A stretch of 64,000 bases of DNA from Trichoplax adhaerens (GCF_000150275.1 NW_002060950.1:3057346-3121345), one strand, 5' to 3'. Positions 1-64,000 are shown, counted from the stretch's first letter. The notes: generated from the letters alone by a model not told the origin. A program made the numbers and translations.

Positions 1-3000
1 AAATAAAGTGGAAAAAAAAGTCAAAGATGAAATGATAGCATTAGATCGGCTTCGAGGAGGCTGCTTTTATGCAATGGAAACAGAAATCATGTATGTCCAA
101 TCTATTTTTAATTAACCTTCTGGCTGATGATCATTAAGATTGATAAAGTAAATTGATGTAATTGGCCTTTAGATTTAAGTACGTTATGACAATGTTGCCA
201 AAGGATTTCTTTTAATTTCTGCACTTACAGAAAAGCTTTCGCTAAAGAAAATTTACCATCTGACACTTTAAAGAATTTAAGAACAACTATCAAAGTGAAT
301 AACATCCCAAAAGCAATAGAGCAGGTTTTACCCTAGAATAATAAAGATTTTCAATTCTTAACGACACTATAGCATATAGGTCAAGCTTACTATACTCTCA
401 TCAATATGATACTATTTATTTTACTACTACTAAATCCAGATGGAACTATTGCATTTGTTTGGCCAAGTCGGAAAAGTAGAAGAGCTGTATAGACTAAACC
501 ATGAAGAAGTGTAGGGATTGAATTTATAGTAGTTAATAATCATGTTACTAAATTATATGAAGTCATTTTTGCAATCTTACGTGATACTTTGGGGTTGCAC
601 GTCATCACTTTGATAACCTTTATAGAAGTCTATCTGATGCTTGTTTAAATAATGTCTTTTTATCTTAATGCATTTAATAGATTAATTAGTAATAGCTCTG
701 AAGCATCGATACAAGTACTCGAAATAAAGAATTATTACAGTAATCTAATGCGCTCAGTCAATCTTAGTTATTGAATTTTATAACTTGAAGGATATCAATT
801 TAAGCTGGCGAATTCGAATTTAGAATTTTTCAAGCTCCAGTAAAAAACATTTTCTCAAAATTATTTCCAATCTTTTAGGCTAGTTGCGTATCGTCAGCAA
901 TCGGAAGCGGCTATTGCTATGCTGTGCCTAGAAAACTTTGAAATTATTGATGACAAGCCGATATCACTGGAAATCCATGATAATCCCATGATTGCTGATA
1001 CTATCAATGAAGTAGTTTATAAAGTACGTCAAAAGATTAACACGGAAGATAGAAAGCAGTGGTACGAAGGGACTCAAAAATTTCGATTCAGTAGAGATTC
1101 TCCCCTATCTGCAACGCTTTTAAGTGATTCTGAGAATATGGAAATAGAAGATTGTGAAAGTAAGTCAAGTCGATTGCAAGTAGCAGAAAATGAGCTAATG
1201 GTTAAGCATGAAGACAAAAAAGCTATCTCGCAAGTATCCGAAGATATGCCTGTAGCGAACCTTGAAGGTAAAAAAGGTATTTCTCAAGTATCCGAAGAAG
1301 TGCCAGCAGTGAAGCATGAAGATAAAAAAGATGTTCGAAAAAATGGCCACCAAAATCTGAAAGTACACGAAAATAATGAGAAAACACCAAATGACTACCG
1401 AAACTGCTCCAAAGGTACTGTATATAACCTATTAAGGAAATGAGTCATGCACCAGCAATTTCGGATGATGATGATGAAAGTCCTAAATAATTAATCAGTA
1501 TTTGACAAAGTGGTCAACCGAATTGAATTATTAGGAGTTAAAACTTGGAGTATCCTCTTCGAAATCAAGCAATTTCTAATTTAAATATAACGTAGACAGT
1601 TTAATTCATAGTTACCGTAATAATCGTTTATGTAGAGGGATAGAATCTCTTAGCTGCACCTAATCAAAATAATATGGAAAAATCGAGCCTAAAGTCATTG
1701 ATGTCGTCATAGATCATTCTATCGTTTTCCGAAATTGATATTTATCCTATCATCTGTGGTAATTATAGGTTATGGCGATTTAACTTGCATGGCGGTACAA
1801 TATCGGCTTGCTCAAGAATGTAGTAAAGCGAATGATAAATTAACAGGTGTATCAGCAGATTGTGATCAAATGGGAATAGATTTTTCCGACCAAGTCGATT
1901 CGGAGTCACACGGCAATGTCATAATGGTTCAACAAGAACTTGAAATATCCACTGTTGTGCATTTTCTTATTCAGCAGACTGAGTTAGAAGAAAGATTAAA
2001 GGAAAATGGCTGTGATACCCGTTTCCAGTATACTGATATAAATAATGATAGAAGTATTCGATTGATTGTGCATATGGCCCCTGAAGATCAAGAGCACATC
2101 AGTAAAATGCTATCAAGTTATACTAAATGCTTTATTTGCGATAGCCATAAAGATTTACAACATCAAATATCAACTTTTATAGCTTTAAGTCTTGAAAAGC
2201 AAATGCTAATTAACGAATATCTGCGGTTTAATGACGTTAAAGCTGGTATCATGTCTAATGGTGGCAATCAGTCGGTGTCCATCGTTGCCCTTAACGCAAA
2301 GGCCTATCAGCAAGCTCTCTCTAGTATGAGAGAAATGTTTTGCAGCCAAGTAACCAGAGTCGATATTGATAACCTATTCTCTCGGCCGGATTTCCATATG
2401 TTTATGAATGGATTAAGAAATTCTTTAACTGCAAGTAATGATATTCATCTGGAAGGTGAATGCAGCGACAATTTTAACTTCTGTAAAATTATCGTCACTG
2501 GAAGTCGATGCGATGTTTCTAATGTGGTTAAAATCATTCAATGTAACTTAAATAGTTATAAAGTCATTGATTATATAATTCCGAATGCTCCAACATTATA
2601 CACGAAATATTTGCAATTGTATTTGCCAGAAGAGCTTCAATTGCTGGAACAATTATGCGGCTGTAATGTTCAATTTGAGATGATCAATGAACACTATGCA
2701 AACATATCCATTAAATGTAGTCAAGTATTTTCATCAGTCATTGCTAAGAAGATGAGAGAACTGATTGATAAAAGCAGTGACATAGAAAGCAATGAAATGC
2801 TGCGCGCAAAATTAATGTCTCAGGACATTTTTGGTGATGATGGTAAAGTCAAAGTTTCGCTAAATGAGGAAGAAGATGCAATTGCTACGACTTATGTTCA
2901 ATGCCAAATGTAGGTAGCATAAGTGATTCCCATTAAATTTTGATCGCCATTAAGTCTTTGTTCAAATTTTTAGGTCAGGTTGAAATTTAGATGTTAAAAT

Positions 3001-4678
3001 GAATAATTTCAGTGACGCAAGTAATGCTGCATCATGCAGAATTGCTAAAAATGATATTTTTGTGGCTTTCTAATTATTATGTATAAATTCCAATTAATTC
3101 TAGCGACATCAATCAGCGAGACGAAGAAACCACAATTCGACAAGGCAACGATACTCATAATTTGAACACAATGTCTGAAAACACTTCTCATTGCAATCTT
3201 GAAATGGATCAGTTAAAAGATGAAAAACGAATTTTTGCTGATGTGAATAAAGATAATTGCGAAGAGTGAGTACAGCCGTTTGCAGTTTCACTTAAGAGGA
3301 TTTTAAATGTCAGTAAAAGCACAGCTATACTATTATGAAATTGATAATTCATATGAGATATTTTGACTGAAAAGTATTCAGGCGCATTACATAACCAGAG
3401 TCATGCTCTGATCAGATTTGAAATAGTCATTTGTTACTAATAGGACTACTATAATTCAATACAGACAGCCTAATCAAGCTACTGTTTCGTGCGAGCTCAA
3501 GGAACCAAATAACCAAAGCAGAACTGATGGAGAAAATAGCGAAACCATTTGTACAAGAGAAGCTGCTCAAAGCATCGATGGTAGCCAAGCTGAATTAGGT
3601 AGTTTACAAGATGAAAAAGAAAGCGTATATGCGGTGATATATTATGAACGTGAAAAGTAAGTAGGAAACGGATTAGATTATAGTCAAATATCTAACGGTA
3701 GAGTAAACCTATAAATAATGAAGATTATGTAGCTTATATCTGTCTATATTCATGCTAATTTATTATCGCTAATACTTTGCTATATTTATAATGTGATGTA
3801 AAATAACTGTACTTTTTATATTAGTAATCGAAGTAAGATCAGTTATTCCAAGAAAGATACGAAAGTAAGGGGAAGAAATTATGCTAATTCTGAAACAACC
3901 GAAAATCTTTCGAAAGATAATACCAAAGTAAATCTTTATTCATCGTTATTGGCCCATAATGGTTATAATAGGAGCGATAAAGTCATTAAATTAGTAAAAG
4001 GAAATCTTGAAAAAGAGGGTACTAAAGTACGTACATACAGTGAACTCTGAGTATAAAGCTCATTTAATGATGTTATGAAGGTGATTAATGTCCCTCCAAT
4101 TATTATCATAGGCAGATGCTATCATTAACTTCATAAAATTGAAAAAATATCACATTGGGGAAATTGGAAAGGTATTACATCGCATTGGCGGGCTCGAGTA
4201 CCGTTTTGATTCCCATCAAAATTTAAAACATCTTACTATTGATGAAATTGGAACCAGTAAGGGTTGTTATTTTGGCTGCAAGAGAGTTTACCATATTCCA
4301 TCTTTAGGCTTCAATCACTCGATATCGGTAAAGTATAGAAAATAATTATGATGCCTTATGTTTAACGAAACACTTGTTTAATATCACTAATAGCCGATCG
4401 TAAATTTTTAGTGGTTCATTGATCGAATTGAGAATTGCTTGGAAAAAGCCCATACAGACTCGATGAATTCCATAGCAATACCAATGTATGGCAGTCCTGT
4501 GTTTTGTTCTGATATCAACAACCTATCTCAAGAAATAGTCATGATTATTTCCAAATTTTATGAAAAATATCAGCAAATGTCGCCATTACAATCTATCCAT
4601 CTTATTATTCCACCCAGTAAATTAGACTGCTATGAGGCTGTAAAGTCTGTGATAATGTCTTTTGAGTTGCTTGTTTAA
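1..4678 (+). CDS. PARP14-family paralog A, 5'-incomplete: RRM(s), KH-like region and a single macrodomain; no WWE or ART domain
   Basis: Predicted exons <1-90, 231-324, 440-510, 879-1414, 1769-2909, 3465-3656, 3825-4026, 4112-4327, 4412-4678, all GT-AG with compatible phases. RRM-like sequence: TTIKVNNIP..LLHLFGQVGKVE..LVAYRQQSEAAIAMLCLENFEII. Macrodomain: IKLVKGNL..ADAIINF..YFGCKRVYHIP..SIAIPMYGS..LQSIHLII. Several exon lengths match paralogs (94, 71, 192, 216 nt). AATAAA at 4797-4802. Confidence 0.8.
1177..1332 (+). repeat. Coding tandem repeat, 3 x 54 bp (18 aa), in the linker of paralog A
   Basis: Units start at 1177, 1231 and 1285: QVAENELMVKHEDKKAIS / QVSEDMPVANLEGKKGIS / QVSEEVPAVKHEDKKDV. 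Confidence 0.85.
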
Positions 4679-7600: not shown

Positions 7601-8877
7601 ATATAGAGTAGTCTTAAAAGCACGCATACTGCATAAGGTGGAGTCTAAATTGGGTTAAAAAAAACCTATTTCGATTGTTGGACCAACCCATAGACTCTAT
7701 TTAAGAGCACAACTAGCCAGTCAGTATCAAAGGCCATCAAAAATAAAAAAGCCCCATGCAAATTTATGCACGCTGCAGGGGTTATAGTATTCAAAGCCTG
7801 TTTAGAACTTGATAAAAAACTCAATCTAACGATTCCTAATGATTCCCTTAGCTTAAGCTGAGTTATCGTTACGCTATTTTTCATCCGTAAATTATTTTTT
7901 CTTAATGTACAATTTCTAAAATTGCTAACCTTTTAAGATTGAAATCAAGATTTAACGCCATCTTCAATATTGGTAAATGGCTTTCCCAAGATTTGCCTTT
8001 ACTCAGCCGTCGAATCCACGGTAGTGTTGCGTGCATAAGATTGCTATAACTAATCAATCCAATCTTGTAGAATATTTAAATTGTTTCGAAAGTTTTTCAG
8101 CTAGAATACGTTAGAAATGATGATGTTGAATTATAGCACATAAAGTATTTATATTCCATCAAATCTCTAATAGTCTCCTGGAGCTACAGCCAGCTTACAA
8201 GTTATGCTTTCCATGATTATACTGTATACATATGTTTAGACAGTATTACTGTGGCTTTTAGCAGTACATATTCAGATGCGAAAGATTGCTTATTATAACA
8301 GTGCATTTATTATCAATTTGTTAGTAGTCAGATTACTTTTAACCCCTGCAACGCTTAGTACTATCCTTAAAGACTGCTTCATACTCACTCAATGGCGTAA
8401 ATATTTCAAAAACTTCTTATTTTCTCATACATTATAGACTACCACCAAATCATTGCTTGTACGTTTGTGGAATTGAATCTAGTGTTCTTGAGGTAATGTG
8501 GTATTAAAAATAGACTCAGATGATGATACTTGATGAATTGCTCTACTATATTAATTTATGTCATCAATTTGACAAGTTACGAGTATGAGAGTATCTATAC
8601 TAAGAGTTTTAATTCACTCTTTCCTTCAAATTAATTCAGTTAATCGACTATAATAAAGTGAACCATCTTTCTTATGTTGGTAGTTTCTGTTCAAATTTAT
8701 TAACGATTACTTTCGATAAAGTTTCAATGCCTTGCACTTACCGCTGTAAAGTAGAAGGTAGCTTTGCAAAAAGTGATGTTATGTAATAAAAAAAAAATGG
8801 AAGCAATTTTGTTACCGATCAATTTCAAATGCCCTCATAAATTTATTATATTCAAACACATTGATTAATATCTTTAG

Positions 8878-11800
8878 GCATTTGAATATGAAGTCTGTAA
8901 AATTATAAATCGAGCCCAAATTATATTTTATCACTATATTGGCATTGGAAAAGAAAATTGGCGATTTGCGTAAGCATAGTGTATAAAATTTAGTAGTTAA
9001 ATAATTTTAAAAGTTTTATTATCACTTCAAGTCGTACATATTGCTGTACTAACAAATTGAGATAATGATATATAATAAACTAATGTTATCCGATGGTTTA
9101 ATCGCCGGTTTAACCAGAATTTAATAATATTCAAAGTCGGGATCAACGATCTAGAAATAGTCTTGTGTGCGATTATATACCTTACCAGAATTAAAATTGA
9201 TTCTGTTTTACATAGAATGTTGTACTGAAAGAGCTGCTTGGCACTACAAGTATTCATATATATTGCACGTTTTCTTTTATCTGGAAATAGACAAATACTG
9301 GTAGAAGAAAGAAACCAAGTCATCCAGTTGAACATAAATTTGAGAGGAATCAAAGTTGGAAAAAGCAAGTTAGGTTTAACTGTTTATTTACCGCCAGAAT
9401 TGCCCCTAAATATCAGAAATGGCATGGAAAAGATAGTTTATGATCAAATGAAAGCCTTAGGATTGCGTAGATCTGGTTGTATGTATGATACGGAAACACA
9501 AAATAGGTGAGTTTTAACTTTCATCTACTCTAGAGTACCAATTTTGCAAGTTAGGCTATATACTTAATCGGTTGATACAGGAATATTCTAATTTGAAACA
9601 CCATTCGTCATCTCTATATTAAGAATAAATGAAGTCAAAGAAGCCAAAAAAGCTTTTTCAGACGATGAATTAAAAGAGTTGACCGAATTAAGAACGCTTG
9701 TCAGAGTCATTAATATACCAGAGGCAATAGCACAAGTTTGTAAAAATTCTTGCATGATGGAATTTCGAATACTTAGAAATACTACATTACGCCTAAATTG
9801 AGAATGTTTCATAATTACATGTCATTTATTTTCTTCCTTTAGATAGAATTAATGCACATCTTTAGCCAAGTTGGAAGAGTAGATGATCTCATTAGGGCAA
9901 GATCCGGCGAAGTGTAAGAAGTTGATTGATAAAAGCTTTTAATCAAATTGTAGATCGTTGCTGATTTGCTCTGCTCTCCTACATGATGATTGAGGACATG
10001 TAGTGTATTATGATCTGTACTGAAGTTTATAGGATGTGTATTTCATAGCATAATCTGTACTAGGTTTGCAAACTTAATGTAATCGAGGTTATAGCTTTGC
10101 AAAGAGCTGGTTTCTTGGATGTTCGATATTAATATAATTTCACCTAGAACTGTTACAGTAATTGTTAACTTTACAGCAATACAAGTATGTAAGACTGATT
10201 TTGTCCTTAAGATTAAAATCACAATTAGTGTATATTTACATTGCCCGTAACAAGTATACTGTATACTGTAGTGAATTGATCATGCACAAACGGCTTGGAT
10301 CTGCAATTAAAAATTATCATTACATCATTTTTCAACTATGCAGAATCGTAGTGTACCGACGGCAATGGGGTGCCGTTATGGCCATGTTGTGTCTGAATAA
10401 GTATAATATTATCAAGGGCAAACGAATAACATTAGAAATACATGAGAAGCCTAATATTGTAACTTTGATCAATAAAGTTATTTGCAGCGTGCAACAAAAA
10501 CTTAAAAGTAATCGTCGAGACCAATGGCTCTTAGCGACTAAAACACGTCGTTGGACTCGAGATTCTTCGTTATCCTCTATTCAATCTGGTGATCTTAGAA
10601 AGGATAAATCCACGGATTTCGTAAATAAGTCGAATGTCTTCCAAGTTTCTGGCGATAACAATAACACTGAAAATACTGAGAAATCTAAAGATTGCAATTC
10701 AAAAACACAAGAAAACAGTAAGGAACTCTCTAGCCTCATTAGCAATGACATTATAGACATATCAATTTTTAAAGCATAAGGTGAAATATTTCAAGTTTCT
10801 TTCTGGCAATTTCTTAAAAGGCTATTTTGAGTATTGTACTCTCTCGTGATTATAAGATCTGAATTATTAGAACAATTATGATGTATATCATTACATATAG
10901 TTGTGTATTATGCAATTTTTATAACATTTGTTGTAGTCAAAGCATTTTTAAATAGTAATTCCTAAGTTTTGATATTGATCCAGCCATATATCTGTCAACG
11001 TAATTTTAGGTCAAGATGATAAATTAACTACCATGAAGGTAAAGCCTCAAAGTGCTGAAGAATATAGGGAAGCTAATAGCCAATTTCCAGTTGTATCTCC
11101 AACGGATAATATAGACTCAAGAATTTCTGATCCAATCAAATCAGAATCAATGAACAAAGGATTAAGGGTTAAACTAGAAATCGAGTTATCTACTGCGGCT
11201 CATTTTCTCATTCAAGAGACTAAGTTAGAAGAATCGTTGCAGCAATATGGTTACGATGTCTATTTCCAATATATCCACATTGAAGGAAATTTTCGATTAA
11301 TCGTTCACATGCCCTCTAAAGATCAAGGGTATATTGGGAAAATGTTATCCAGTTATACTAACTGCATTATTAGCAATAGCAGTCAAAATCTGCCTCATCC
11401 TTTATCCACTTTTATTGCTCGTCATGATGAGAAGCAGGTACTAACTAATAAGCATCTGCGATTTAATGGTATCAAAGCTGGAATTATGCGTCATGGTGAT
11501 AGTCTATCGGTATCTGTTGTTGCCTTAGACGCAAAAGCCCATCATCTAGCTATTTCTTTATTGAGAGAAATGTTTTGCTGCCAGTCGACCACAGTCAATG
11601 TTGATGGCCTATTCGTTAGATCCGATTTTCATATATTTATGCATGGATTAAGAAATCATTTAGCTGGAAACTATGATATTTATCTGGAAAGCGTATACAG
11701 TAATAATTTTGATTCATGTAAGATTCTCGTCGCTGGAAAACGAGCTGATGTTTCTAACGCAACCCACATTATTCAGAACCATTTAGATAAATATAAAGTC

Positions 11801-13837
11801 GTTGAATACGTAATACCTCATGTTCACTTAATAAATGCAATAAATCAGCAATTGTATTGGCGAGAAGATCTCCAATTACTAGAAAAAGCGTACGGTTGCA
11901 ATATTCAAATTGAGAAGACCACTAATAAGGAAGCGAATATTTTAATTAAATGTAGTCAAGTTTATGCAACAAATATTTATCAAAAGATGGAAGAACTTAT
12001 TCAAAGAAGTTCAGAGGTAGAAATAAGTGAAGTTTTGAATAAAAAAATAACATTAAAAAATATTTCTGGTCGCAATTTCGAAATGGATCGTACACAAGAC
12101 AAACATGAAAATTTAATTACCGCATTACCCAACGAATGTGAACGGTTGGTAGCTCACAGTTGCATTTGTTACGTTTAGTTATAGATGTTGACTTGTCGAC
12201 ATATTTTATAGTACGAATTGAGATTTTTGCTGTTCAATGAATCTAATTAGTCAAGTAAACGATACTATACGTATATAATGCTAAAGTACATTTTTAAAAG
12301 TGCTAATTTAAAAGATGAAAAACTCAAAATTTTGTTGCTATGATCAATAGTAGCCATATCGAGTGGGAACTTCGCTTGCAGTTTAACCTTAGAAATGCTG
12401 GATGCTAGCAATAGCCGTAGTTTATATTAAATGTTACTATACCGTAAAAGAAGTATGTGGACTAAATATTATGCGATTGAATTGCTAGAATAAACCCCAG
12501 TTCTTCTTCAATTGGGACAGTGAGTCAATATTTATCAATTTTTTTTCAATCGAACGTAGAAAACTCTGTATAGCTACTGCTTCATACAATATCAAGGAAT
12601 CAATTAACCAGAATCGAGCTAATGAAGGAGGTAGCGAAACGAAGTTTGAAAGTGAAATAGGTCAAAACATGGTTGATGGCAAAGTTAACCTGGATACTTT
12701 ACAAGATGAAAAAGAAAGTACCTTCATTCTAACATGCGATGATTGTAACAAGTAAGTAGGGTATCGCTAATCTTAGTCCATAATTAGCAATAAATTATTC
12801 CATCAATAATAAGAAATAGTTATCTATTAGCGTTAATTTTATAGTATACTTATAATATATATATAATTGGAGGAAGACAACCGTACATCCACTTAATATT
12901 CGATTTTGAGAAGTCAACAGGATATCGCTAATTTCCGCTAATAATTAATCAATGATGTATAGTGCCTATGGATAGACAAAAAATAGTTATATGCAACATG
13001 AGGAAAACATTATTATTCTGTGTTTTGGCAATTGAAGTAGGATCACTTATTGTCAGGAGGGTACAAATTCTAAAACAACCGAAAATCCTTCTCAAGTTAA
13101 TCCTGCAGTACATGTTTCTTCTCTATCATCGGCTACTAATGACCATGATAAAATCTCAAAAATTATTAAATTAGTAAAAGGAAAGGTTGAAAAAGAGGGT
13201 ATTGAAGTATGTATGATGAAGTAAATTTCAAGAGTAGCGTTCATTTAATGATTACTGTCTATGCAATCATTCTTAGGCACAAGCTATCGTTAACTACGTA
13301 AAACTGGAAAAGCACCATAAAGGAGAAATTGGAAAGGCATTACATCGCCTTGGTGGATTCCAGTATCAGCTTGATTACTACCAAAATTTGCAACGTCTGA
13401 CTGTGGATGAAATTGGAATTACTAAAGGAACTTACTTTGGCTGCAAGAAGGTTTATCATATTCGGTTTTTAAGCTCCAATCAGCCAATATCGGTAAGACC
13501 CTAGGAAATATATTTCGTAATTTAAGTTCATATATTAATTTTGTTTACAACCGATTGTAAATTTTAGTGGCTCATTGATCGAATCAAAAAATGCCTTGAG
13601 AAAGCCCATTCAGATTCGATAAACTCGATAGCAATCCCCATGTATGGTAGTCCTGAATTTAGTACTAATATTGACGAATTATCTCAAGAAATGGTCAAGG
13701 TTATTTCAAAATTTTATGACGAACATAAGCAACTAACACTTGTGAAATCTATACATCTAATTATTCAACCTAGCGACTTAAAATGTTATGACATTTTTAA
13801 ATCTGTGTTAATGTCTTTCGAGTTGCCCGTAATTTAA
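8878..13837 (+). CDS. PARP14-family paralog B (start exon not located): RRM-RRM, KH-like region and a single macrodomain; no WWE or ART domain
   Basis: Predicted exons 8878-8969 (tentative), 9291-9506, 9624-9735, 9843-9913, 10344-10717, 11010-12144, 12560-12751, 13038/13041-13206, 13277-13492, 13568-13837. Colinear with A, e.g. FHIFMHGLRN vs FHMFMNGLRN, YFGCKKVYHI and SIAIPMYGSP. First RRM-like segment: WRFAQILVEE..LNINLRGIKVGKSKLGLTV. AATAAA at 13930-13935. Confidence 0.8.
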
Positions 13838-15355: not shown

Positions 15356-15474
15356 CTCACTACCGTTCTATAATTCATCATTTGGTTTTATTATGTTTAA
15401 GTTTGAATAACAGTCAAATAATGAGGAAAGTAAAAGATCAAAAACAAAGAAAAGAAATTAGAGAATTACTTCAT

Positions 15475-15531: not shown

Positions 15532-16481
15532 GTTATATATGGTGCTTAATTGTAGTAAATAATTATTCAAGGAATGTGCATACGTCGGCACATTTTTTAA
15601 ATAAATATTAATTAATCTTCTCTGATCGTGAGCGAAGTGACTGCTTTAGTGGAATTCAAGCCTAATGATGGAGTGCAGTAATGTTTGATTGATTTTATGA
15701 TTTACATTATTCCAAATTATATCGTTAAAATATGAGCCATATACAGTGGTGCTATCCATTAAAATCACTTGCATAGATAGCGTAGATCTCATTTTATCTG
15801 CTATTGGTGGTATTTTACTTTCACTAAGAAGCGTCATAAATCATTGTATTTTTGCTATCCCCATATTTTGTTCTCCCAGTTAGCCATGTTAAGTTTTACA
15901 GTGCTTGATCGATCGTTATAGATGATGTTGATAGCGGCAATCAACGTCTTATTTATAACTGGCAGTAATAAAGATGAGAATAAAAGCTAGACACTAGCTA
16001 TTAAACACGAATTATAGTCGAATATCAAAGTCCATCTTGCCAGCAGAGATTTCTTTGGAAACTGTTTGTGTGAAACTATATTTAACACCTTGGCAGTAGC
16101 CAAGATGTGTTTGGTGCTGGCATAAAGAAATTTTCAAACCCCTTGCTAATCAAGTGATTGTTCAAGATATATATTTTAACGTTTCAATATTAACTGTACT
16201 ATGTGAACAGCGCAGTTTCTGTTGAAAATTAGAAACTTGTGAGGACTAAGTTCGCGGACTAGTACGGACAGTACTGTAGACATTTGTAGATACTATCATT
16301 TACTTTGGATGGCAATATAATAAGACAACAAGATTCAATTGTTAGTCAATAGACGGTACCATCAGAAAGAAGACGACAGGAGAGGATAGATCTTTTATGG
16401 CGAGTTAGTTAAAGATCAGTTTTATTAAGGTTGGCCAGTAGGATTGTCAGTCGCGATTAATCTAATTAAAAAAATTCGTCA

Positions 16482-44000: not shown

Positions 44001-44154
44001 ACGAGGAAATTTGATTGAAGGCGATTACGCTCCGACTACTATGTATTACTACCTGACAACACATTAGCTTATCAATTCTGACATAACGTTATTAACATGT
44101 GTATTTTAATTAAACAATGAATTAGTGCTTACAATTAATTTATTCATTTTATAG

Positions 44155-46860: not shown

Positions 46861-49800
46861 TCATGATACTAATTTTTCAAATTTATGCAAATAATCATCT
46901 ACATATGTTAACAATTTCCAATAATCGGTAGCAATTACAAATTTTATGTAGTGATCTAAATGATGATAACATTTCAGTAAAACATGATATTGAGGCGGAA
47001 GATACCAGCCAATCCAGATCTCATCTGCAAAATTTTGATATTTAAATTTAAAAGAAAGACTAATCATATACTTGGAAATTAAAACAATACACCTTAGAGA
47101 CGAAATTTAATAATTACCAGTTTGATCAATAACATAAACAGAAAGTGTTGATACCAAAGTATCCTGCAATTCTTGAGAGTCAGCTTGATTTAGACAGCAA
47201 ATTGATATTGCACCAAGTTTTCCATCTCCAGCCCTAATAGAAATTTTTTCATGACAAAACTTAAAACAATTTGAAATCTCTAACAAGTATGTATTATAAT
47301 ACATTTTGCATTGGTTTCCTTCAATGTATGACCACAGCTGCTCGAAAAGGATTCTTTTCGAAAGGACCTCATTATCATTCTAAAGATAAATGGAAGACAC
47401 TTGATATTCATATCGTTAAGAATATATCCTTAACTAATTGCAGAAGTTACAAATTATAGCCATAACCAAGATCATCTTTTGATATTAAATCTGAACATAC
47501 TATAAAGTAATCTGTTGGCAAAGCTAAAGGAAGAATAACATCTTGAAATTCAATGGATAATGGATCCAGCGGGGCAATACATGTTCTATTTTCGTTGTCG
47601 GTAACTGTAGCTCTTAAAGAAAGTATATACGCGTAAGTTATCAGTAACTTATTATCACATAGCAAAGAAGCTAAGTAATGAGTTCTTAAAATAACTTACT
47701 TAATATTCAACGTGCATGGCAAAGGATCAACACTTTGAATCTTAAAAAAAACCGTTTGACAACCTGTGCAAATGAGCGTACAAATCAATTTTGAAGTTAC
47801 AATAACCAAAATATGAACATTTTATCAAAGGCTTGCAACTATTTTCATAACAGAGCGATTTTATAACATTATTCACCTGGGTTAGGTGCGCTAGATATCT
47901 CCTTCGATAGGAATGACACTGTAACATCTAGTCATCAATGGGAAAATTATCACTTACAATATAGTTGGTGACAATGCAACTTTACAAACGCTAAAAATTT
48001 CTCTGCAAGTATTGAAATAATTACTATCCTCATACCATTAACGCTTTTGTAATTGCTATTGCTTTCTAACTCCAGTACAATAGCAACATACTTCTTTTCA
48101 TAGTCAACGGCTAAATCTTCCTTCTATTTTGTGAAAGATAAATACTAATTCAATCTTAAAAATAAATTATACTGCATACAGTAGAAGACAATAACGTCAA
48201 TATGTATATTTGAACCAAATCAGCTTGATTTACATATCCAATTAAGAGATCGAATTAATCCTATACTTACGTAATAGATAAAACATTCAACATTTATTGT
48301 CCACAACTCTTCCGAGCTAGTTAGTTGTTTAAAGTAATGATCTAATAAACCTATTAAGTTTTAGTAAGGGCCTGTGTCAGTAGATGCCTATTACTGCTAG
48401 ATATATTATGGTTATGACAAACACAAACCTTCTTCTCGTACAATATCTCCGTAACTTATAACTAAGCGATCGCGTTTGCTATTAAAATCGACTGCTGTAT
48501 ACATATTTTTAGGAACCCTATCGGTATGCCAAGAATCCAGGTATAAATTATGAGCATCTTTAACATCAGATTAAATACAAAGACAGCCTAATTTTTCACA
48601 TAAAATGACAGCAATAGCTTACTTTGCCAATGATATTCCTAAATCGTCGACTTCTATGACCGGCAAATCAACTTCTTTTGATAGTTTCGAGATATCGTCT
48701 ATTACCATAAAAACAATCTTTATGCTAGTAATCTTAAAATGCTACTAAGTTACCAAACGTTGGTGTACAATAGCAAATCTTACCTACTACAATTTTTGAA
48801 ATTAATTCTAACTGATTATTACTTGAACCTGCCGACAGAATAGTTCTCAACTATAATAAGAATTCGAATAATTGTCCACAATGTAAATTTAACCGTCAGA
48901 CCAATGAATCATGTAAAATAATTTACCTTATCATTAGAAACGCTTGTTAGCAAACAATAGTACATATACGCTTGATCTTTAATATCTTAATAAAACGTGT
49001 TAAGAATAAACTTTTTGAAATATGAGGATTATCAACTACTAAAACTTATGATTTGAAATAGCGAGAAAGTAAAAGGATACCAACATCATTAAAATAATCT
49101 TTCATCTTCATCAAAACTTCACATAAATCTATAAAAACAGTACATCTTGCATTAGCTAAATATATTTTTGCGCTATTCATACACATATTTCTATAAAAAA
49201 TTTCTCTTGTTACCTTTCAATATGTATGTCGTATCATGGTTTATCATTATGCAACGGCAAATAGAAAGTACTGCTTGACCAGTTTTCCACATGCCAAACT
49301 GACATATATCACTGGTTTCAAGAAGATTTTGAAGAAATTGCACGATAACCTTTATATAACAATTTTTAATATCATTGAATTACAGATATAAATAGTAATT
49401 ATTTATCTAATTTTACTATAGTTCAACTACAAAAAGCATGTAGATGTTTCGTGTTTAAGTTTCAAGGCAATTATACCATCGGTTTGATTTCCTTTTCTTG
49501 TGCAGAGACTTCTAGCAATCGTAAATGATCTAATAGATTGGGCAATACTTGGGTCATGGGTATTACAGAGGCAATATAATCCGTTAAAGATTTCAACACG
49601 TTCAGTTGAAATCCGCTAAGTAGAAAAGTAAATTTACACAAAATTATAATTTAACGTGAACATTTTTATCTCTAAAAAACATAGAAAGTAACCGTCTATA
49701 ATGGCAGGTTTGAATAATTACGGTACCTGCCAGTATGCGTGTCCGAAATGCAACGAATAAAATTTAGTATATGGATTGTGAAATTAGGATGGCGCTTGAC

Positions 49801-52800
49801 AATTGTTAGGACACAACTGCACATACTGCTAGATAAAGACTTGTTGCTGTCAAGAAACCTTTGACAAAAATTGTAGAATACACGTAATAGTGTCGTTACA
49901 GCTAAAGAGCTAGCAGCAATGTCAGTACGCTGCATAAGTCCAGTTAGACAGCCGATAAGGATTGTCGTCGTCTCTACAGCAAATAACGTCAGCAATGTAA
50001 ATTTTTACCATTAGTTGAATTTAAGATAATTAATTTAACATTGTATCATGATTTCTATCGTACCTCTAGATTCACCCAATTCAAAGGAATGGTTTAATAT
50101 GATCAATTTACGTAAAATTATGTCTAAAAGGCAATTTTAAATTTTTAATGTCATTGAAAATAGTAACACGAATAGGTAACAGCAACTTTATTTATTACCG
50201 AAATTGTCATAGACTTGCGGATAAAACCAGACGATAAGGTTATAATCCCAGAAATAGGGTAAAGAAATGTCTTTTGTGCAACGCATTCCAATCGGCTACA
50301 ACGATTCAAAGTCATATTCTTTTATTTAGCCTGACGAGCTAAGTTTTGCAATCGTTATCATTTACGACTACAAATACCGACCTTACTATCATCCGGAAAG
50401 TGCATGATCCATTCGCAATAAATCAATTGCTGTTCTTGCGAAATCATAGGAGACCGTATCATCAATACTAGTCTAGAACACAATTCAGAATAATTAACTC
50501 AAGAGTAGATTTCTAGTACATTTAATCATCTGAATGCGGTCCATTTTTAATAACATTACCGTTCTAAAAGGTAATAATCGTCGTCTTGATTAAATAATTC
50601 GTCCCCACATTTCATCTACTCATGAAAGACAAATACTGTATATTATGTTGTTTACTTCTTACCTCAGTTACATGTGCAAGATTATAATCATAGCTAGAAT
50701 ACTTTAATCGATCATAAATGGTTACCTTAAGTAGCATTACTGATTGAAGTGAAGGTAAATCGCAAGTAACCATCTTTTGTAAAATAAGTAATTTAAAGGT
50801 CTGAAAAATTAAGCATAACATAGTATATATATATTATCAGTCTAAATTGTGGAGCTTATAGTATTAGCACAGATATACTTGATAGGAACATACCTTCTGC
50901 GATAGTCTGGAAACTGTAACACATTCTACAAGCTGAACGATAAAGATTAGATTACCAATAGGCTAATTTTATTTAAAGACAGCAAAACACTTATTACCTT
51001 AAGGACTACCAGCATTTGCCCAGTTGGCGTTAACAGCATAAAATTATCGGAATCCATAACAAAGGAGATGATTGCTTTCAACTGGTTGCTGTCATCATCA
51101 GACAGCAGTGGCTCAGCACTATTAACCATTTCAAGATTGGACGTAAAAGATAAATTCTTTTCCAAAAGAGCCTAAATTTCAGAATTAAGTAGCAAATATA
51201 AATTTACCGTTAAAGTTTAATGCATACATAAATTATTTCTATTGCAGAAAATTAATGGGAATTGAAATATAAAACCACCTTAGAAGACTCTAGTTTTCCA
51301 TTGAAAAGATCTTTCAAAGACAAATTGCTAAAATATATTTACAGAATAATGGAATACAATTTTGAGCTAATTAAATGAATGCCAGAGGAGCATAATATCA
51401 CAGTAAATCATACTTGCGTGGTTCATGAATAATGCATTGAATGGCATTCTTTAAAACTGTAGTGAAAAGAATCTGCGGTGACAACAGTCGATCAATGTGT
51501 TATGAAAACGTCACAGAATAAGAATTTCTGATCGATAGAATTTAGAATAAACGATTTTCATGTCAACTTTAGAAAATGTATTAGCCTTCTACATTATTCT
51601 CACGACATCAAGTACTGCCTCATAAATTGCAAGATAAATTCTTGGCATATCTCTAATATTATGCTTTAGTCGTAATTATCTCACCCAATAGTGTTGAAAA
51701 ATATGGCTGCATTCCGCTTGGCATAAGTTGTAATAATAGTCCAGACGATGGCCAAGTAAGCCCTTGATATAAAAATTAAAAATAGCACATTAACAAATTG
51801 ATGTACAAGGACGTAATAATTATCAAACATTCATTTCTACTAGGCTATAAGAGATATAAGAAATGCATGATTAGTTTTCGGTTTAAGCACCGGGTATAAT
51901 TGCTCTATTTCTGTCAAGCATTGACAAGCCAAACCCCTAAGAATACGATCAGTTCCAGAATTGATCTGTCGAATGATATAAAAAGAAATTTTTAGACTAG
52001 AGACTAGAATCGCAAATATGAAATAATCAATGCTACACTTACCCTATCAATTCTATTCAATAAAATTTGGATTAAGGTTGCAAACAAGTCAGGAAAAACA
52101 TTCTATATAAAATTAGGAGGAAATTTTGATTATAGCAAGTATTACTTTCAATCGATTTTAGGATTAGAATAAGAAACGATATTGACCAGTACATCTAGCT
52201 AACTCTTCCATTGATTAGTATTACCCAATGACTACCGATCTTTGTGCATATTGGTATATACCACAAACTCTTTTTTAATTGTTGGTGCACAATAATAATA
52301 ATCAATTACCTTGATATCAAATTGAATCACTAGCGAAGTGATAGTAATCATAATCTAGACGGTGAAACGAAAGTTAGTAATGCAATTGTACTGAAGAGAG
52401 AAATAACATTATTATGCGATATTAGATCGTTTATACTAAAATAGGCAACATATTCCTCATTACTGTGTATCGTTACATGCTATGTTAGGTTACTAACATA
52501 AGTAGGGAATACAGTTTCTGGAATTTGGATTTGCTGTAGAACTCCTAATAGTGAAGCAATAGCTTGTTCTTGACTATTCGATGCATAAATAAATTTAGTT
52601 AAAAATAACCAGATATACTTATGTAACAATACTATACGTAAAGCATTACAAAGAAACAATCAGAGTCGTATGTGTAGTTGATATTCAATTGGTATACGAG
52701 TATCGTAGCTTTTTTCCATTACCTGGTTTCATCCACTAATAGAATGTCAGCCTGAAATAAATAGTCGGCCCATCGTTAATTAGAATTTGCATAACATAAT

Positions 52801-57600: not shown

Positions 57601-58623
57601 AAAAGCAGTAGAAAACATACTGAGAGCCAAATTTGGACCATTATGTCATAAAGTTGATTTGTAGAATATAGTTTTTGATCAACCTTAAGTATCAGTTTTG
57701 TAGAGTTGGCACTTGTTCGCTACAGCCTAGCTATTATTAACAAGAGAATTGCATCATAAATCATAAACTATTAATTGATAAACAACAAAATCTTAAACCT
57801 ATGCATATCAAATAATGATAGTATCTAATAATTCAAAAACAAGACTTTTCAATATACTGCATAACTTGCTTTTAAATACTATTCGTGATTTACAATTAAA
57901 GCACGTTAATTAATTACTACTACATTAATGTATTAAATGAGGACGGAACTTTTATAGCCAATTTAAATAAGAATTAAATTTATGCTTGGATCAGGGTAAT
58001 GAAGATTGATGGATTTGAATGAAAGGCCTTATTAGGAACAACTCTTGCACGCAATAATTAACAGTAACTAAGCTACCTTCCATATCATTCATAGACAGCA
58101 ACTTCATCTGTATTCACAGCAATTACCTTATCAAATATAATCAATTCTGACCTATTTTAAGCATGCATTTACGTGTTATGTGCCATGGAATCCAACGAAG
58201 AATAATTTAATATCATCGTAAACTCGATACACTAACTTAAACGTGCCCTTCACAAATCTTAGCCCTACATTTATTGTAAAGTTTTAAGACATTGCATTCT
58301 TTGCAAGTTAAATATTACCTCTATCCATTTAATTATATATACGCGCATATATTATCAAATGGAAAATTAACTTGAAATTAATCAAATTTTAAATGACAGT
58401 AACAATAATTATACGTCATTGTCAGAGAAAGTGCTTCTTAACAATTATTATCATCGACATTGACAGCTACAGTGCAAAATGAAAATCAATAAAAGTATTG
58501 AAAACAACATAGGCCTTAATACCTTATAAAGACTCTTTTCTCTGATTTTATGTTCATTACTCGAATAAAGCTTTCGGCAACTTCACCTTCGTACCATCAT
58601 TTCCCTGATTTTTATTTAGGAGG

Positions 58624-59688
58624 ATGAATAGTCTAAATGTTACTAATACATCCACCAATAACACTATTAACCGTCTAAGTACATCAGCAGAATTACTTGC
58701 TAGATTAGGAGCGATAACTTTGGTAATAATTGGCGCTGGTATCATCCTGAACATTATTTTAATTATTGGCACCCATTTTAAGAAATCATTACGTAAAAAA
58801 ACATATTATTTTATGGCTAATCTTGCTGGCTGTGATCTACTTTTTTCTCTGTCAATTATATCTACCGTAATTACTGCAATTAATACAAGCAGAGCTCCAA
58901 TACCATCGCATATTCACACAATCCTATGTAAAGTCTGTATCGTCTTCCCTGCCTATTGGTCTTATACAGCCTCTGTGCAAACGTTAGTTATAATTAGTCT
59001 CGAGCGCTATAGAGCTATCTTTCGGCCTACTAAAAAAATAACCCCTAAAAAATGTAAAATGTTATGCGCTTTAGCCTGGATTATTTCATTATTTATTTCA
59101 CTTCCATTCCTATTCACTGCTAGGTCTATTGAAAACCAATGCCTTCCTTTTCCAATTTATTCTCACTGGGTCATTATTGTCAACTTCATCTTGATTATAT
59201 TTCAATTTGTTATTCCAACCATAGTAATGATTACTGCTTATACTTTGATATTGCATCAGCTTACCACGAAAACGACTGCGATTGGACAGGAATCCACTAA
59301 TAGTAGAAATCTTAAGCGTAAAACCGTTTATATGTTGCTAGTAACAACTATTACATTTTTATTATGCGCTCTGCCTTGGACCTTAACATTACTTTTCGAA
59401 GCTACTACAGGCAAGTTTGCACCTGAGTTACTGCTACATGATAATAAAACCAATCCAGCAATGAAAATGATCGTTACATTTAGTAGGATAACTTTATCGA
59501 TATCAACCGTCTACAATCCAATAATTTATTGTATATTCAATCGTGAAATCCGATCACTATTTTTTCCATGCTATTATCGACGCAAAAATAACGCAGTAAC
59601 TACAACTAAAGTTTCTTTCGCTCCAGAAAAAAGCAACTCTTACCAGACAATCTCAGTAAAACCGGTGATAAACCCAATGAAAGCCTGA
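58624..59688 (+). CDS. Single-exon class A (rhodopsin-family) GPCR, orphan, peptide-receptor-like
   Basis: 354 aa with seven hydrophobic segments and N-terminal NxT sequons. TM1 GIILN, TM2 NLAGCD, TM3 CK..SLERYRAI, TM4 W..SLP, TM5 FVIP, TM6 FLLCALP, TM7 NPIIY, helix 8 NREIR. Confidence 0.95.
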   Translation: MNSLNVTNTSTNNTINRLSTSAELLARLGAITLVIIGAGIILNIILIIGTHFKKSLRKKTYYFMANLAGCDLLFSLSIISTVITAINTSRAPIPSHIHTILCKVCIVFPAYWSYTASVQTLVIISLERYRAIFRPTKKITPKKCKMLCALAWIISLFISLPFLFTARSIENQCLPFPIYSHWVIIVNFILIIFQFVIPTIVMITAYTLILHQLTTKTTAIGQESTNSRNLKRKTVYMLLVTTITFLLCALPWTLTLLFEATTGKFAPELLLHDNKTNPAMKMIVTFSRITLSISTVYNPIIYCIFNREIRSLFFPCYYRRKNNAVTTTKVSFAPEKSNSYQTISVKPVINPMKA

Positions 59689-62480: not shown

Positions 62481-62530
62481 NNNNNNNNNNNNNNNNNNNN
62501 NNNNNNNNNNNNNNNNNNNNNNNNNNNNNN
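62481..62530. other. Assembly gap (50 N)
   Basis: Run of n characters. Confidence 1.
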
Positions 62531-63503
62531 TTTAGACTTTATTCACTATAACGATGCTGAGCATACATCACAAACTTTGCGAAAACTCTCTTCTAAATCG
62601 TGTTCAAGTATATATCAAGTTTGTCCTTACGGTTGCTTATCTGGCTTTAGTACTATATTAGTAACCATTAATGCCCGTGAAGAAAAATCGATCGCGATTC
62701 CGTTGTTAAGTCATGAAATGGATTTCACTCATGTTTATAGCTTAATAGATACTATAGAGATATTTATAGCTAATAATCTAGGTACGAGAACGTATCTAAA
62801 TTGTTTTAATTTTGTCATTGGATATAAAGATCGAAGTCGAGAATTCGCAAGCTGGATGCAAATTGTAATCGTCGATAAGCCTTTACAGTTTGGGTGGCAA
62901 ATTACTCAACACGTAGCAGTTAAAGAACTTGGTTTTAATGTAACTTATGTCGCTAAAGATAAATCTATCATTACTAAGATGGAATCAGAAATGGAAGAAC
63001 TTACAGATGCTTGGACGAGTCATAAGATGACTGAAGAAGATTATTTTGATTCAGTAGATCAAAATAGTTGGTCTGAGCTTGCGTTACAATTTTGGTCAGA
63101 ATATAACACAATTCTAGTAAAGCAAGGTCAAGATAAAACTGTGTATATATACGGGTTCGAGAACGATATACTGAATGCTGTTTCAAGTATTCATAAGCTA
63201 AGTAAAACTTACTTTGAAGAGAAAGCTCAGAATGAAGTAGAGAAAGTTACAGCTGAAACAGCTAAATGGTATGTAAAAGCTGAAGAATCTAAGACTTACT
63301 TTGAAGTGAAGCTAAACTACGAAATTGAAAAAAACTACAAGATTTATACTAAAGATAAGACCAAGAAGACTTTTGTAATCGATGCAGGAAATAAAACGAT
63401 CGATTTCGGCGAAATGAATCTGAAGTTTGTTGATGGAACAGAGTATCCTATAGGAAAATCGTCAATAACAGGTGTAGCAAAGTATTGATATCTCATCAGT
63501 AAT

Positions 63504-63538
<35 letters not shown>

Positions 63539-64000
63539 ACACTTATAGAATTTTTATAATTATTAGCTACTTTACTTGTATAATTAAAAATAGAATATAT
63601 AATTTCGAAAGATTTCGATTAAGTCTATTTCCAGAGAGAAATTCGAAACTAGAAATATATCTAATTTATCATAGTTTGATAGTTATCTTTATTTATTGCT
63701 TTACTTGTATAATTAATTAATTGAATTAAAGATCGAATATAAAGTATAGAAAGATTGTAGTCTAATCTTATGTATGAATTGGTAGCTAGTAGCTTATCAA
63801 ATTTATTATAAGTTACTAATTTATGAAGGAGTTAGTTATTCCTTACAGCGATCGTGATTTAATCTTATGATGGCATTATAATATATATGGCTTGCTGTTT
63901 ATTAGAATTGGCTATACCTACTAACTGGGAATACCAAAATCAAGAAGAGATCAAAGATGGCTACTTTCGCATAGCCGATGTTCAAATCAGGAGGAAATAA
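62531..64000 (+). CDS. PARP14-like paralog E, partial: second macrodomain, KH-like, WWE and start of the ART exon; possibly a frameshifted pseudogene
   Basis: Exon <62531-63471 is homologous to C and D (QVCPYG, SIAIPL, WQIT, IYGFENDI, AKWYV..LNYEIEKNY..IDFGEM..YPIGK). The next exon starts at 63906 (LAIPTNWEY..) and runs into TAA at 63998-64000. Confidence 0.8.
63507..63534. repeat. (AT)n microsatellite
   Basis: About 14 AT units just downstream of the donor of the large exon of paralog E. Confidence 0.9.

What the first reader, a model, noticed from the sequence alone, without database searches (positions are those of the whole stretch)
1..64000. Tandem array of five PARP14-family genes, diversified by domain loss and active-site change: candidate ADP-ribosylation immune locus in an early-branching animal
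Seen: five co-oriented paralogs share intron positions and phases, for example an invariant 216-nt macro exon in A-D and 71-nt RRM exons in A, B and D. They are nevertheless highly diverged and fall into distinct architectures. A and B are RRM-KH-macro only, C lacks RRMs and has an altered ART, D is complete with two candidate last exons, and E may be disrupted. Established: vertebrate macro-PARPs (PARP9/14/15) are antiviral, evolve rapidly, and undergo duplication and loss. Inference: this is an independent, lineage-specific birth-and-death expansion that recreates writer, pseudo-enzyme and reader/decoy roles.
Basis: partly seen in the sequence, partly recalled or inferred. Interest (0 to 1): 0.85.

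Follow-up and report, generated by a model that had tools for sequence, protein, structure and literature searches.

The report
Placozoan PARP14-like gene array
The window holds part of a 14-locus, roughly 211-kb tandem array of PARP14-like ADP-ribosylation genes in Trichoplax adhaerens, a family expansion already noted in the literature, with two expressed-looking copies that lack the enzyme domain and one "copy" that may be an assembly artefact.

Summary
The exon-level observation is accurate. A, B, C and D are real, co-oriented paralogs in Trichoplax adhaerens. They share a 216-nt macro exon, and A, B and D share a 71-nt exon.

The window shows only part of the locus. Eleven full-length copies, the two ART-less copies (A, B) and the fragment E span about 211 kb of the scaffold.

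E begins exactly at the N gap and lacks all 5' exons. It is 98.5% identical, intron included, to a paralog 135 kb upstream. It is a very recent partial duplicate or a misplaced allelic contig. An AP5B1 gene and a GPCR gene separate D from E.

Fold prediction adds a cryptic second macro domain, a WWE domain and KH-like repeats. The architecture is therefore PARP14-like, but Pfam finds no RRM or KH.

Catalytic triads vary: D has H-Y-I, C has H-Y-V with HG changed to HR, and upstream copies have Y-Y-T and H-P-T. RNA contigs show that B and C are spliced.

All placozoan ARTs form one clade beside PARP14 (100/99), which supports a lineage-specific expansion. Most duplications look old.

Placozoan PARP14-like duplications were already reported (Citarelli 2010, Perina 2014). 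The immune role remains untested analogy.

The parts
1..4678 (+). Paralog A, 3' two thirds (the gene starts about 5 kb before the window). Second RRM-like module in exons 229-327, 440-510 (71 nt) and 865-1185. KH-like exon 1702-2910. Linker exons 3454-3636 and 3832-4029. 216-nt macro exon 4112-4327. Last exon 4412-4675 with stop TAA at 4676. No ART domain.
   Evidence: KH-like fold. dN/dS against B.
8409..13837 (+). Paralog B (ART-less, RRM-like x2, KH-like, macro). Exons 8409-8501, 8881-8970, 9286-9501, 9646-9738, 9843-9913 (71 nt), 10330-10650, 10979-12175, 12549-12751, 13038-13207, 13277-13492 (216 nt) and 13568-13834, with the stop at 13835-13837.
   Evidence: A spliced RNA contig joins 12751 to 13038 (GT..AG), its loose end matches the start of the 216-nt exon, and another contig runs unspliced across the stop to 13908.
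16187..23357 (+). Paralog C. 5' exon 16187-16497 (ATG at 16482), intron 16498-16597, large exon 16598-19332 (about 580 aa of low-complexity sequence followed by KH-like repeats), exon within 19396-19857, macro exon 19947-20162, large exon 20237-21697 (end of macro1, cryptic macro2, WWE), ART exon 1 at 22650-22976 (HG changed to HR), ART exon 2 at 23100-23354 plus stop. Triad H-Y-V.
   Evidence: Public models P0001 (TRIADDRAFT_58772) and P0010.
31610..41090 (+). Paralog D (3' part is TRIADDRAFT_58775, UniProt B3S3M3). RRM-like exon 31610-31828, 71-nt exon 32298-32368, KH-like exon 34214-35368, macro exon 37079-37294, large exon 37416-38879, ART exon 1 ending at 40162, proximal last exon 40827-41087 plus stop. 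Triad H-Y-I.
   Evidence: Structure model and fold matches.
44154..44411 (+). Second candidate last ART exon of D. It has an intact frame, an acceptor ag, the same phase as the proximal exon, 68% amino-acid identity to it, and its own stop.
   Evidence: dN/dS of 0.23 against the proximal exon over 81 codons. Its use in RNA was not tested.
62481..62530 (.). Assembly gap (N). The sequence on its right starts in the middle of an exon. The sequence on its left is unrelated to that exon.
62531..64000 (+). Fragment E. Last 318 codons of the large exon (62532-63485), an intron, and the start of ART exon 1 (63908-64000). It is 98.5% identical in DNA to paralog P4 at C1407:2985667-2987133.
   Evidence: The 30 kb downstream of the window is withheld.
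46864..51171 (-). Unrelated gene: exons of AP5B1 (adaptor complex 5 beta subunit). Not part of the family.
58609..59688 (+). Unrelated gene: single-exon rhodopsin-type 7TM receptor ORF. Not part of the family.

Best explanation
The window covers the right-hand part of a placozoan-specific tandem array of PARP14-like macro-PARP genes.

The array has 14 loci in about 211 kb of Trichoplax adhaerens scaffold C1407, and 13 of them are on the + strand. The inferred ancestral gene encoded N-terminal RRM-like modules, about four KH-like repeats, two macro domains (the second too diverged for Pfam to detect), a WWE domain and a clade-3 mono-ADP-ribosyltransferase domain. This is collinear with macro2-macro3-WWE-ART of animal PARP14.

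Repeated tandem duplication, mostly old, produced copies that kept their intron positions but diverged to 23-31% identity. They then changed in several ways:
- A and B lost everything after macro1 through one shared truncation.
- C replaced the RRM region with a long low-complexity N-terminus and changed the Gly after the catalytic His to Arg.
- D keeps the full set with an H-Y-I triad and has a duplicated last exon.
- Upstream copies carry Y-Y-T and H-P-T triads.

Inferred, not shown: copies with an H-Y-hydrophobic triad mono-ADP-ribosylate targets near bound RNA or ADP-ribosylated partners. ART-less or triad-defective copies would then act as non-catalytic binders or regulators, as PARP9 and DTX3L do for PARP14. 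A role in defence is plausible only by analogy.

E is either a very recent partial duplicate of paralog P4 or an assembly artefact.
For: Species and locus.
Paralog map and shared exon bounds and phases.
Array size: (profile of the large exon: 11 full-length-type exons on C1407 between 2,911,136 and 3,096,215, plus E, plus the truncated A and B; 3 more on other scaffolds).
Domains:
- Macro and PARP by Pfam in exons and public models.
- Second macro fold at residues 111-284 of the D exon model (pLDDT 81), Z 12-14 with rmsd 2.6-3.0 A over about 143 residues to macroH2A, PARP9 MD2 and PARP14 MD1-3. The top Foldseek hit is human PARP14 macro1-2, E 1.6e-8.
- WWE: phmmer match to the WWE region of a mollusc PARP14, Foldseek hit 1ujr, weak Pfam WWE in paralog P0038.
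- Collinear BLASTP alignment to the mollusc PARP14.
- KH-like: four beta-alpha-alpha-beta-beta-alpha units. Tandem KH domains are the top Foldseek hits (E 4.8e-4), and single KH domains give Z 8-9 with rmsd about 2.2 A over about 74 residues.
ART affinity and triads.
Placozoan monophyly.
Old lineages and H1-H2 1:1 pairs.
A and B under constraint: pooled dN/dS 0.40 over 958 codons, all 11 compared exon pairs open.
RNA: B and C are spliced, C's start is defined, and B reads through its stop unspliced.
Against: - Pfam detects no RRM or KH domain in any exon or in any public full-length model of the family.
- A profile of the KH-like exon does not align to a real PARP14. The mollusc PARP14 N-terminus finds nothing in the window.
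- The KH-like repeats lack GXXG loops, and their fold scores are only moderate.
- RRM support is limited to motif inspection and a language-model lead of 0.82 on an upstream paralog, below that tool's trust level.
- Only two macro domains were found, not three.
- The ART tree has few outgroups: two PARP14-like and three PARP12-like sequences, with no PARP9, PARP10 or PARP15.
- The sources of the divergent partner sequences (P0002, P0004, P0008, P0012, P0014-16) are unnamed, so 'other placozoans' is an inference.
- No enzymatic, binding, induction or selection data exist for any copy.
- Expression was examined only for B and C, and only from assembled contigs.
Confidence: 0.75

Rival explanations
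1. E is not a fifth gene. It is a misplaced allelic contig (haplotig) of paralog P4 that the scaffolder placed next to a gap.
For: - E starts at the first base after the N gap and in the middle of an exon (profile position 165 of 485).
- No 5' exons of E lie in the 17 kb to its left.
- It is 98.5% identical to P4 across exon, intron and next exon (17 mismatches and 2 gaps in 1471 bases). dS is 0.011.
- This divergence is close to the 0.6-1% difference seen between the reference and other Trichoplax data in gene C.
Against: A real, very recent segmental duplication would look the same. The tree places E outside the H1+H2 pair of TRIADDRAFT_58761, which is a different paralog, so it does not bear on this question. 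The 30 kb downstream, which could show where the similarity ends, is withheld.
Confidence: 0.4
2. A and B are decaying pseudogenes, truncated relics of full-length copies, and not functional ART-less proteins.
For: Both lack the distal 400 codons of the large exon and all ART exons. Their macro1 diphosphate loop is altered (YGSP instead of IG[TA]G). RNA depth for B is low, 2-5.
Against: The truncation lies at the same place in both copies, so it predates their split (dS about 0.86). Since then all 11 compared exon pairs have stayed open over 958 codons, with pooled dN/dS of 0.40 and 0.23-0.30 in the macro exons. Splice sites are kept. B yields a correctly spliced RNA contig and a contig that runs through its stop into a short 3' end with a poly(A) signal about 95 nt downstream.
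Confidence: 0.12
3. The array serves a housekeeping or regulatory role, such as RNA metabolism, stress granules or transposon control, and expanded without any link to pathogens.
For: Pairwise dN/dS values are all below 1. Most duplications are old and retained as 1:1 pairs between H1 and H2. PARP14 and related clade-3 PARPs also act in stress granules (PMC4245714). No immune data exist for placozoan PARPs in the papers searched.
Against: Orthologous lineages are extremely diverged: D is 48% identical to its nearest partner from another source. Some lineages have no counterpart in this genome. Catalytic residues were lost repeatedly. These patterns resemble those of vertebrate antiviral macro-PARPs (PMC4038475, PMC13224862). 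This is analogy, not a test.
Confidence: 0.35
4. The distal last exon of D (44154-44411) is the only surviving piece of a lost neighbouring paralog and is not an alternative 3' exon of D.
For: Tandem copies do decay here. P3 has a split frame and an interrupted ART exon. The public model of D uses only the proximal exon. An interspersed repeat lies just downstream.
Against: Its closest relative is D's own last exon (68% identity, against 51% to C's), so it arose by local duplication. It keeps an acceptor site, the same phase, an open frame and a stop. dN/dS is 0.23. No other remnant of a lost paralog lies in 41100-44139.
Confidence: 0.4

Closest known systems
Vertebrate PARP14 (BAL2/ARTD8)
   Same: Same order of modules: RNA-binding-type N-terminus (RRM, KH-like), tandem macro domains, WWE, and a C-terminal mono-ART with an H-Y-hydrophobic triad. 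The best solved-structure matches for the ART exons are PARP15, PARP10 and PARP14, and for the large exon human PARP14 macro1-2. A collinear alignment to a mollusc PARP14 covers macro2, the start of macro3, WWE and ART.
   Different: Two macro domains, not three, and the second is not detectable by sequence. Pfam's PARP14-specific RRM and KH models do not match. The KH-like repeats lack GXXG. The third triad residue is I, V, M, L or T instead of L. The placozoan genes form their own clade, so none is a 1:1 ortholog of PARP14.
PARP9 with DTX3L, and PARP15 (partial duplicates of PARP14 in vertebrates)
   Same: Partial copies of a PARP14-like gene carry only some modules or an inactive ART. PARP9 has Q-Y-T, and PARP9 plus DTX3L together resemble PARP14's domain set (PMC13224862). 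Here U4 has Y-Y-T, U1 has H-P-T, and A and B keep only RRM-like, KH-like and macro modules.
   Different: These are independent events in a different lineage. No ubiquitin-ligase module is present. A and B lack an ART domain entirely, whereas PARP9 keeps a dead one. No interaction among the placozoan copies was tested.
Published Trichoplax macro-PARPs: 'Clade 3B' (Citarelli 2010, PMC2964712) and 'PARP14-like duplications in placozoan and sponge' (Perina 2014, PMC4245714)
   Same: The same genes. Gene D's model TRIADDRAFT_58775 (B3S3M3) is one of the two Trichoplax sequences in the 2010 alignment. Perina 2014 notes frequent PARP14-like duplications in the placozoan and clustered copies in lancelet.
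   Different: In what I could read, those surveys do not describe the 14-locus array, its shared exon structure, the ART-less members, the cryptic second macro domain, the KH-like repeats or the triad variants.

Membership tests
PARP14-like macro-PARPs (PARP clade 3, macro-containing) | C-terminal PARP-type ART domain with an H-Y-(hydrophobic) mono-ART triad | tested here: met
   D has H-Y-I and C has H-Y-V (with HG changed to HR), by alignment to PARP15 and PARP14 chains. Pfam PARP matches. Not met by A and B, which have no ART exons. Unknown for E, where only the start of ART exon 1 lies in the window.
PARP14-like macro-PARPs (PARP clade 3, macro-containing) | [quoted passage not shown] | tested here: met
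   Pfam Macro in the public models of D's paralogs and in exon pieces. Second macro fold at residues 111-284 of D's large exon, Z 12-14.
PARP14-like macro-PARPs (PARP clade 3, macro-containing) | Three tandem macro domains, as in vertebrate PARP14 | tested here: not met
   Only two macro folds were found. Residues 285-375 of the model are a small alpha/beta unit of unassigned fold.
PARP14-like macro-PARPs (PARP clade 3, macro-containing) | WWE domain between the macro domains and the ART | tested here: met
   Residues 371-465 of the D exon match the WWE region of a mollusc PARP14 (E 1e-5). Foldseek hit to WWE structure 1ujr. Pfam WWE at E 0.011 in paralog P0038. Each line is weak on its own.
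PARP14-like macro-PARPs (PARP clade 3, macro-containing) | N-terminal RRM domains of the PARP14 type | tested here: inconclusive
   Pfam is negative for the exons and for full public models, and phmmer is negative. RNP-like strand and helix motifs are spread over three exons per module in A, B and D. The protein atlas lists RRM_PARP14_3 clusters first for the N-terminus of paralog U2, but at 0.82, which is only a lead.
PARP14-like macro-PARPs (PARP clade 3, macro-containing) | KH-like repeats between the RRMs and the macro domains | tested here: inconclusive
   The predicted model of A's exon has four beta-alpha-alpha-beta-beta-alpha units. Tandem KH structures are the top Foldseek hits (E 4.8e-4), and single KH domains give Z 8-9. 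However, Z near 8 is middling, there are no GXXG loops, and neither Pfam KH_PARP14 nor hhalign gives a match.
PARP14-like macro-PARPs (PARP clade 3, macro-containing) | ART domain groups with PARP14 rather than with PARP12/13-type proteins | tested here: met
   The placozoan clade plus two PARP14-like proteins is separated from three PARP12-like proteins at 99/96. The best non-placozoan database hit is a fish PARP14-like protein (E 6.5e-20, against 2.4e-12 for the best PARP12-like hit). Sampling is thin.
Immune (antiviral) macro-PARPs | Induced by infection or nucleic-acid sensing | not testable with these tools
   No challenge data were available. The single reads call showed only that B and C are transcribed and spliced.
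Immune (antiviral) macro-PARPs | Recurrent positive selection at macro or ART surfaces | not tested
   Only pairwise dN/dS between paralogs was computed, and all values are below 1. No codon alignments of orthologs from several placozoans were available.
Tandem multigene family evolving by birth and death | Adjacent co-oriented copies with shared intron positions, duplicates of different ages, and losses or disabled copies | tested here: met
   Adjacency and orientation. Shared exon bounds. Ages range from dS 0.011 (E and P4, if real) through about 0.8-0.9 (A and B; D's two last exons) to saturated. P3 has a split frame and an interrupted ART exon. One clade has no close counterpart in this genome.

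The most novel reading that the evidence does not exclude
Placozoans independently split a PARP14-like gene into a catalytic 'writer' (D-type, H-Y-I), catalytically disabled copies (U4 with Y-Y-T, U1 with H-P-T, perhaps C) and stand-alone RRM/KH/macro proteins (A, B). These would work together as one complex or circuit, a convergent counterpart of the vertebrate PARP14-PARP9-DTX3L module, used in nucleic-acid-directed defence in an animal without interferon.
Probability: 0.2. Interest if true: 0.65.

Novelty: new member of a known kind. Interest (0 to 1): 0.4.

Why it matters
Macro-PARPs are central to the conflict between vertebrate hosts and viral macrodomains. It is an open question how old that system is and how it diversifies.

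This locus gives a concrete map, verified exon by exon, of an early-animal expansion. It has 14 loci with defined variants, including natural ART-less and triad-mutant copies, which could be expressed and assayed side by side.

It also shows that two PARP14 features, the tandem macro domains and the KH-like repeats, persist in placozoans below the detection limit of sequence profiles. That corrects the impression from databases of a 'single macro plus PARP' protein.

The basic fact of placozoan PARP14-like duplications is already published, so the gain is detail and testability and not a new kind of system.

Tried and rejected
- Pfam on the ten largest exons and on twenty smaller open frames gave only partial Macro and PARP hits. 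No RRM, KH or WWE was found.
- hhalign of the KH-like exon profile against a real PARP14 found no match.
- phmmer of that PARP14's first 900 residues against all open frames of 144 kb found nothing.
- A search with C's 915-aa exon in the 5.8-billion-protein set returned only its own public model.
- The 30 kb downstream of the window is withheld and reads N, so E could not be followed.
- I considered that B and C, or A and B, might be one gene. I rejected this because B has its own stop and an unspliced 3' end, and C has its own 5' exon and ATG.
- I considered that the 27575-28238 / 45125-45782 similarity marks a segmental duplication tied to D's second last exon. I rejected this because it is a high-copy interspersed repeat.
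- One search contained an off-by-one error in a script. It was corrected, and the output is not used.
All searches were exon by exon, by reference, or used public protein models. Pooled dN/dS is a sum of per-exon counts. The only translation across a splice junction was inside a script, to locate C's start codon.

Full report
**Source and setting.** The window is Trichoplax adhaerens scaffold C1407:3057346-3121345, + strand. The 915-aa open frame at 16588-19332 is 100% identical to TRIADDRAFT_58772. GC content is about 30-35% throughout.

**The gap.** The N run is at 62481-62530.
- To its right an open frame starts at 62532. It aligns to positions 165-480 of a 485-position profile of the family's large exon.
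- The 480 bases to the left of the gap, and the whole stretch 45000-62480, hold nothing homologous to the missing first about 164 codons or to any 5' exon of the family.
- The two sides are therefore not continuous parts of one exon. At least about 0.5 kb of exon and everything upstream is hidden or absent.
- The right side (62531-64000: exon, intron and next exon) is 98.5% identical to C1407:2985667-2987133, another family member that I call P4. dS is 0.011.
- This divergence is close to the 0.6-1% difference between the reference and other Trichoplax data in gene C. E is a very recent partial duplicate or a misplaced allelic contig, and I cannot tell which. The 30 kb downstream is withheld.

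**The observation.** Comparing all + strand open frames with each other gives four solid paralog units, A to D.
- The 216-nt macro exon has identical ag|...|GT bounds and phase in A (4112-4327), B (13277-13492), C (19947-20162) and D (37079-37294), and in four more copies upstream. The public model of D uses exactly these bounds, and an RNA contig's loose end matches B's exon start.
- The 71-nt exon is at 440-510 (A), 9843-9913 (B) and 32298-32368 (D).
- The junction between ART exon 1 and ART exon 2 has the same phase in all copies.

**Size of the array.** A profile of the large exon finds 19 places in the genome. With the flanks fetched and mapped, the order on C1407 is:

| Locus | Public model or note |
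|---|---|
| P1 | 58758, the only copy on the minus strand |
| P2 | 58759 |
| P3 | 58761 |
| P4 | no public model in hand |
| P5 | no public model in hand |
| U1 | 64129 |
| U2 | 58766 |
| U3 | H2 ortholog P0042 |
| U4 | H2 ortholog RDD38020 |
| A | ART-less |
| B | ART-less |
| C | 58772 plus a second model |
| D | 58775 |
| (AP5B1, minus strand; a 7TM receptor) | unrelated genes, |
| E | fragment at the gap |

That is 14 loci in about 211 kb. Three further full-length-type exons lie on other scaffolds, and one more truncated piece lies 725 kb away.

**Domains.**
- Pfam sees only Macro and PARP, both in exon pieces and in full public models of paralogs.
- An AlphaFold2 model of D's 488-aa exon was built with 14 aligned family sequences (pLDDT 81). 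It shows the C-terminal half of macro1, then a complete second macro fold at residues 111-284. That fold gives Z 12-14 with rmsd 2.6-3.0 A over about 143 residues to macroH2A, PARP9 MD2 and PARP14 MD1-3. The top Foldseek hit is human PARP14 macro1-2, E 1.6e-8.
- After the second macro fold come a small unassigned unit and a WWE-like domain (1ujr). The same stretch matches the WWE region of a mollusc PARP14.
- BLASTP of a paralog against that mollusc PARP14 is collinear over macro2, the start of macro3, WWE and ART.
- A model of A's 403-aa exon (pLDDT 73, about 90 in the core) has four beta-alpha-alpha-beta-beta-alpha units. Tandem KH structures lead the Foldseek list (E 4.8e-4), and single KH domains give Z 8-9. 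This is moderate support, and the repeats have no GXXG loops.
- The RRM call rests on RNP-like motifs split over three exons per module and on a weak language-model lead. Pfam, hhalign and phmmer are all negative.

**Catalytic sites.** Triads were read by alignment to PARP15 and PARP14 chains, using the translations.

| Copy | Triad | Note |
|---|---|---|
| D | H-Y-I | both last exons carry Y and I |
| C | H-Y-V | Gly after the His changed to Arg |
| U2, P2, P3, P4 | H-Y-M | U2 has Cys, not Gly, after the His |
| U3, P1 | H-Y-V | |
| P5 | H-Y-L | |
| U4 | Y-Y-T | |
| U1 | H-P-T | also has Arg, not Gly, after the His |

The diphosphate loop of macro1 also varies: IG[TA]G in most copies, GIDENH in D, and YGSP in A and B.

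**A and B.**
- Both end about 88 codons into the large exon, right after the last helix of macro1. Their stops are one codon apart. No ART exons follow.
- Over 958 aligned codons in 11 exon pairs, amino-acid identity is 51%, dS is about 0.86 and dN/dS is 0.40. dN/dS is 0.23-0.30 in the macro exons.
- The truncation is therefore shared and old, and both genes stayed under constraint afterwards.

**RNA evidence.** The single reads call used assembled contigs of three RNA-seq runs and one DNA-like run.
- B: a contig joins 12751 to 13038 (GT..AG) and continues into the 216-nt exon. Another contig crosses the stop unspliced and ends at 13908, before a poly(A) signal at 13930.
- C: all three RNA runs join a 5' exon (from 16187) to the large exon across a 100-nt GT..AG intron. 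The reading frame opens at an ATG at 16482, with a stop upstream in frame. C therefore has no RRM exons.
- C's first about 580 residues are hydrophilic and low in complexity, and they are unique to C.
- A, D and E were not examined.

**Evolution.**
- D's large exon has only 29 hits at E up to 0.001 among 1.84 billion representatives. Of the ten looked up, nine are Trichoplax H1 or H2 proteins or exon-sized ORFs from unnamed assemblies, and the tenth is the mollusc PARP14.
- In a tree of this exon, H1 and H2 copies pair 1:1 with almost no divergence.
- D pairs with P0002 (100/100). P0002's best match in this genome is D at 48%, with the next best about 30%.
- C, P1 and the P3/E group also pair with unnamed sequences. 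One unnamed clade has no close counterpart here.
- An ART tree puts all 12 placozoan sequences in one clade (100/99) next to two PARP14-like proteins and apart from PARP12-like ones (99/96).
- Together this supports a placozoan-specific expansion whose main lineages are old and fast-diverging. More recent events are the A/B split, the duplication of D's last exon (dS about 0.8) and possibly E.

**What is known.**
- Citarelli 2010 placed Trichoplax macro-PARPs in 'Clade 3B'. Gene D's model B3S3M3 is in their alignment.
- Perina 2014 reports frequent PARP14-like duplications in the placozoan and sponge, and clustered copies in lancelet.
- A 2026 review repeats this and links such duplications to antiviral adaptation.
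- Trichoplax sp. H2 models of the family are named PARP14, PARP9 or PARP11 in GenBank.
- I found no paper on placozoan PARPs in immunity.
- The kind of system is known. What is new is the map, the ART-less pair, the hidden domains and the triad variants.

**Limits.**
- Function is inferred only.

Noticed in passing
window 27575-28238 and 45125-45782: Two copies of an interspersed repeat of about 630 bp. The first-look search found 652 candidates genome-wide, and the 40 scored are about 86-89% identical. It lies in D's upstream region and just after D's distal last exon.
   Followed up: partly
window 46864-51171 (- strand) and 58609-59688 (+ strand): An AP5B1-like gene and an intronless rhodopsin-type 7TM receptor ORF lie between D and E. 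E is therefore not adjacent to the A-D block.
   Followed up: partly
G000:C1407:2969581-2973089 (loci L012, L013): Paralog P3 (TRIADDRAFT_58761) has its large exon split over two frames near 2970324-2970338. Its ART exon 1 is interrupted by about 1 kb. The H2 ortholog's protein reads straight through. This is either a disabled copy or sequence errors in this assembly.
   Followed up: partly
window 16598-18340: The first about 580 residues of C are a Ser/Asn/Asp/Lys/Glu-rich low-complexity region with no counterpart in other copies. RNA contigs from three runs carry different variant combinations here, with about 1% differences.
   Followed up: no
window 4412-4675, 13568-13834, 37416-37680: The diphosphate-binding loop of macro1 (IP.IG[TA]G in most copies) reads YGSP in A and B and GIDENH in D. 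ADP-ribose binding by macro1 may therefore differ among copies.
   Followed up: no
L001 (window coordinates about -18145): The H2 ortholog of upstream paralog U4, the copy with the Y-Y-T triad, begins MGQLFCLAC.
   Followed up: partly
G000:C1389:557967-626092: Four PARP-domain exon hits cluster on another scaffold but have no match to the family's large exon. This may be a second, different PARP cluster.
   Followed up: no
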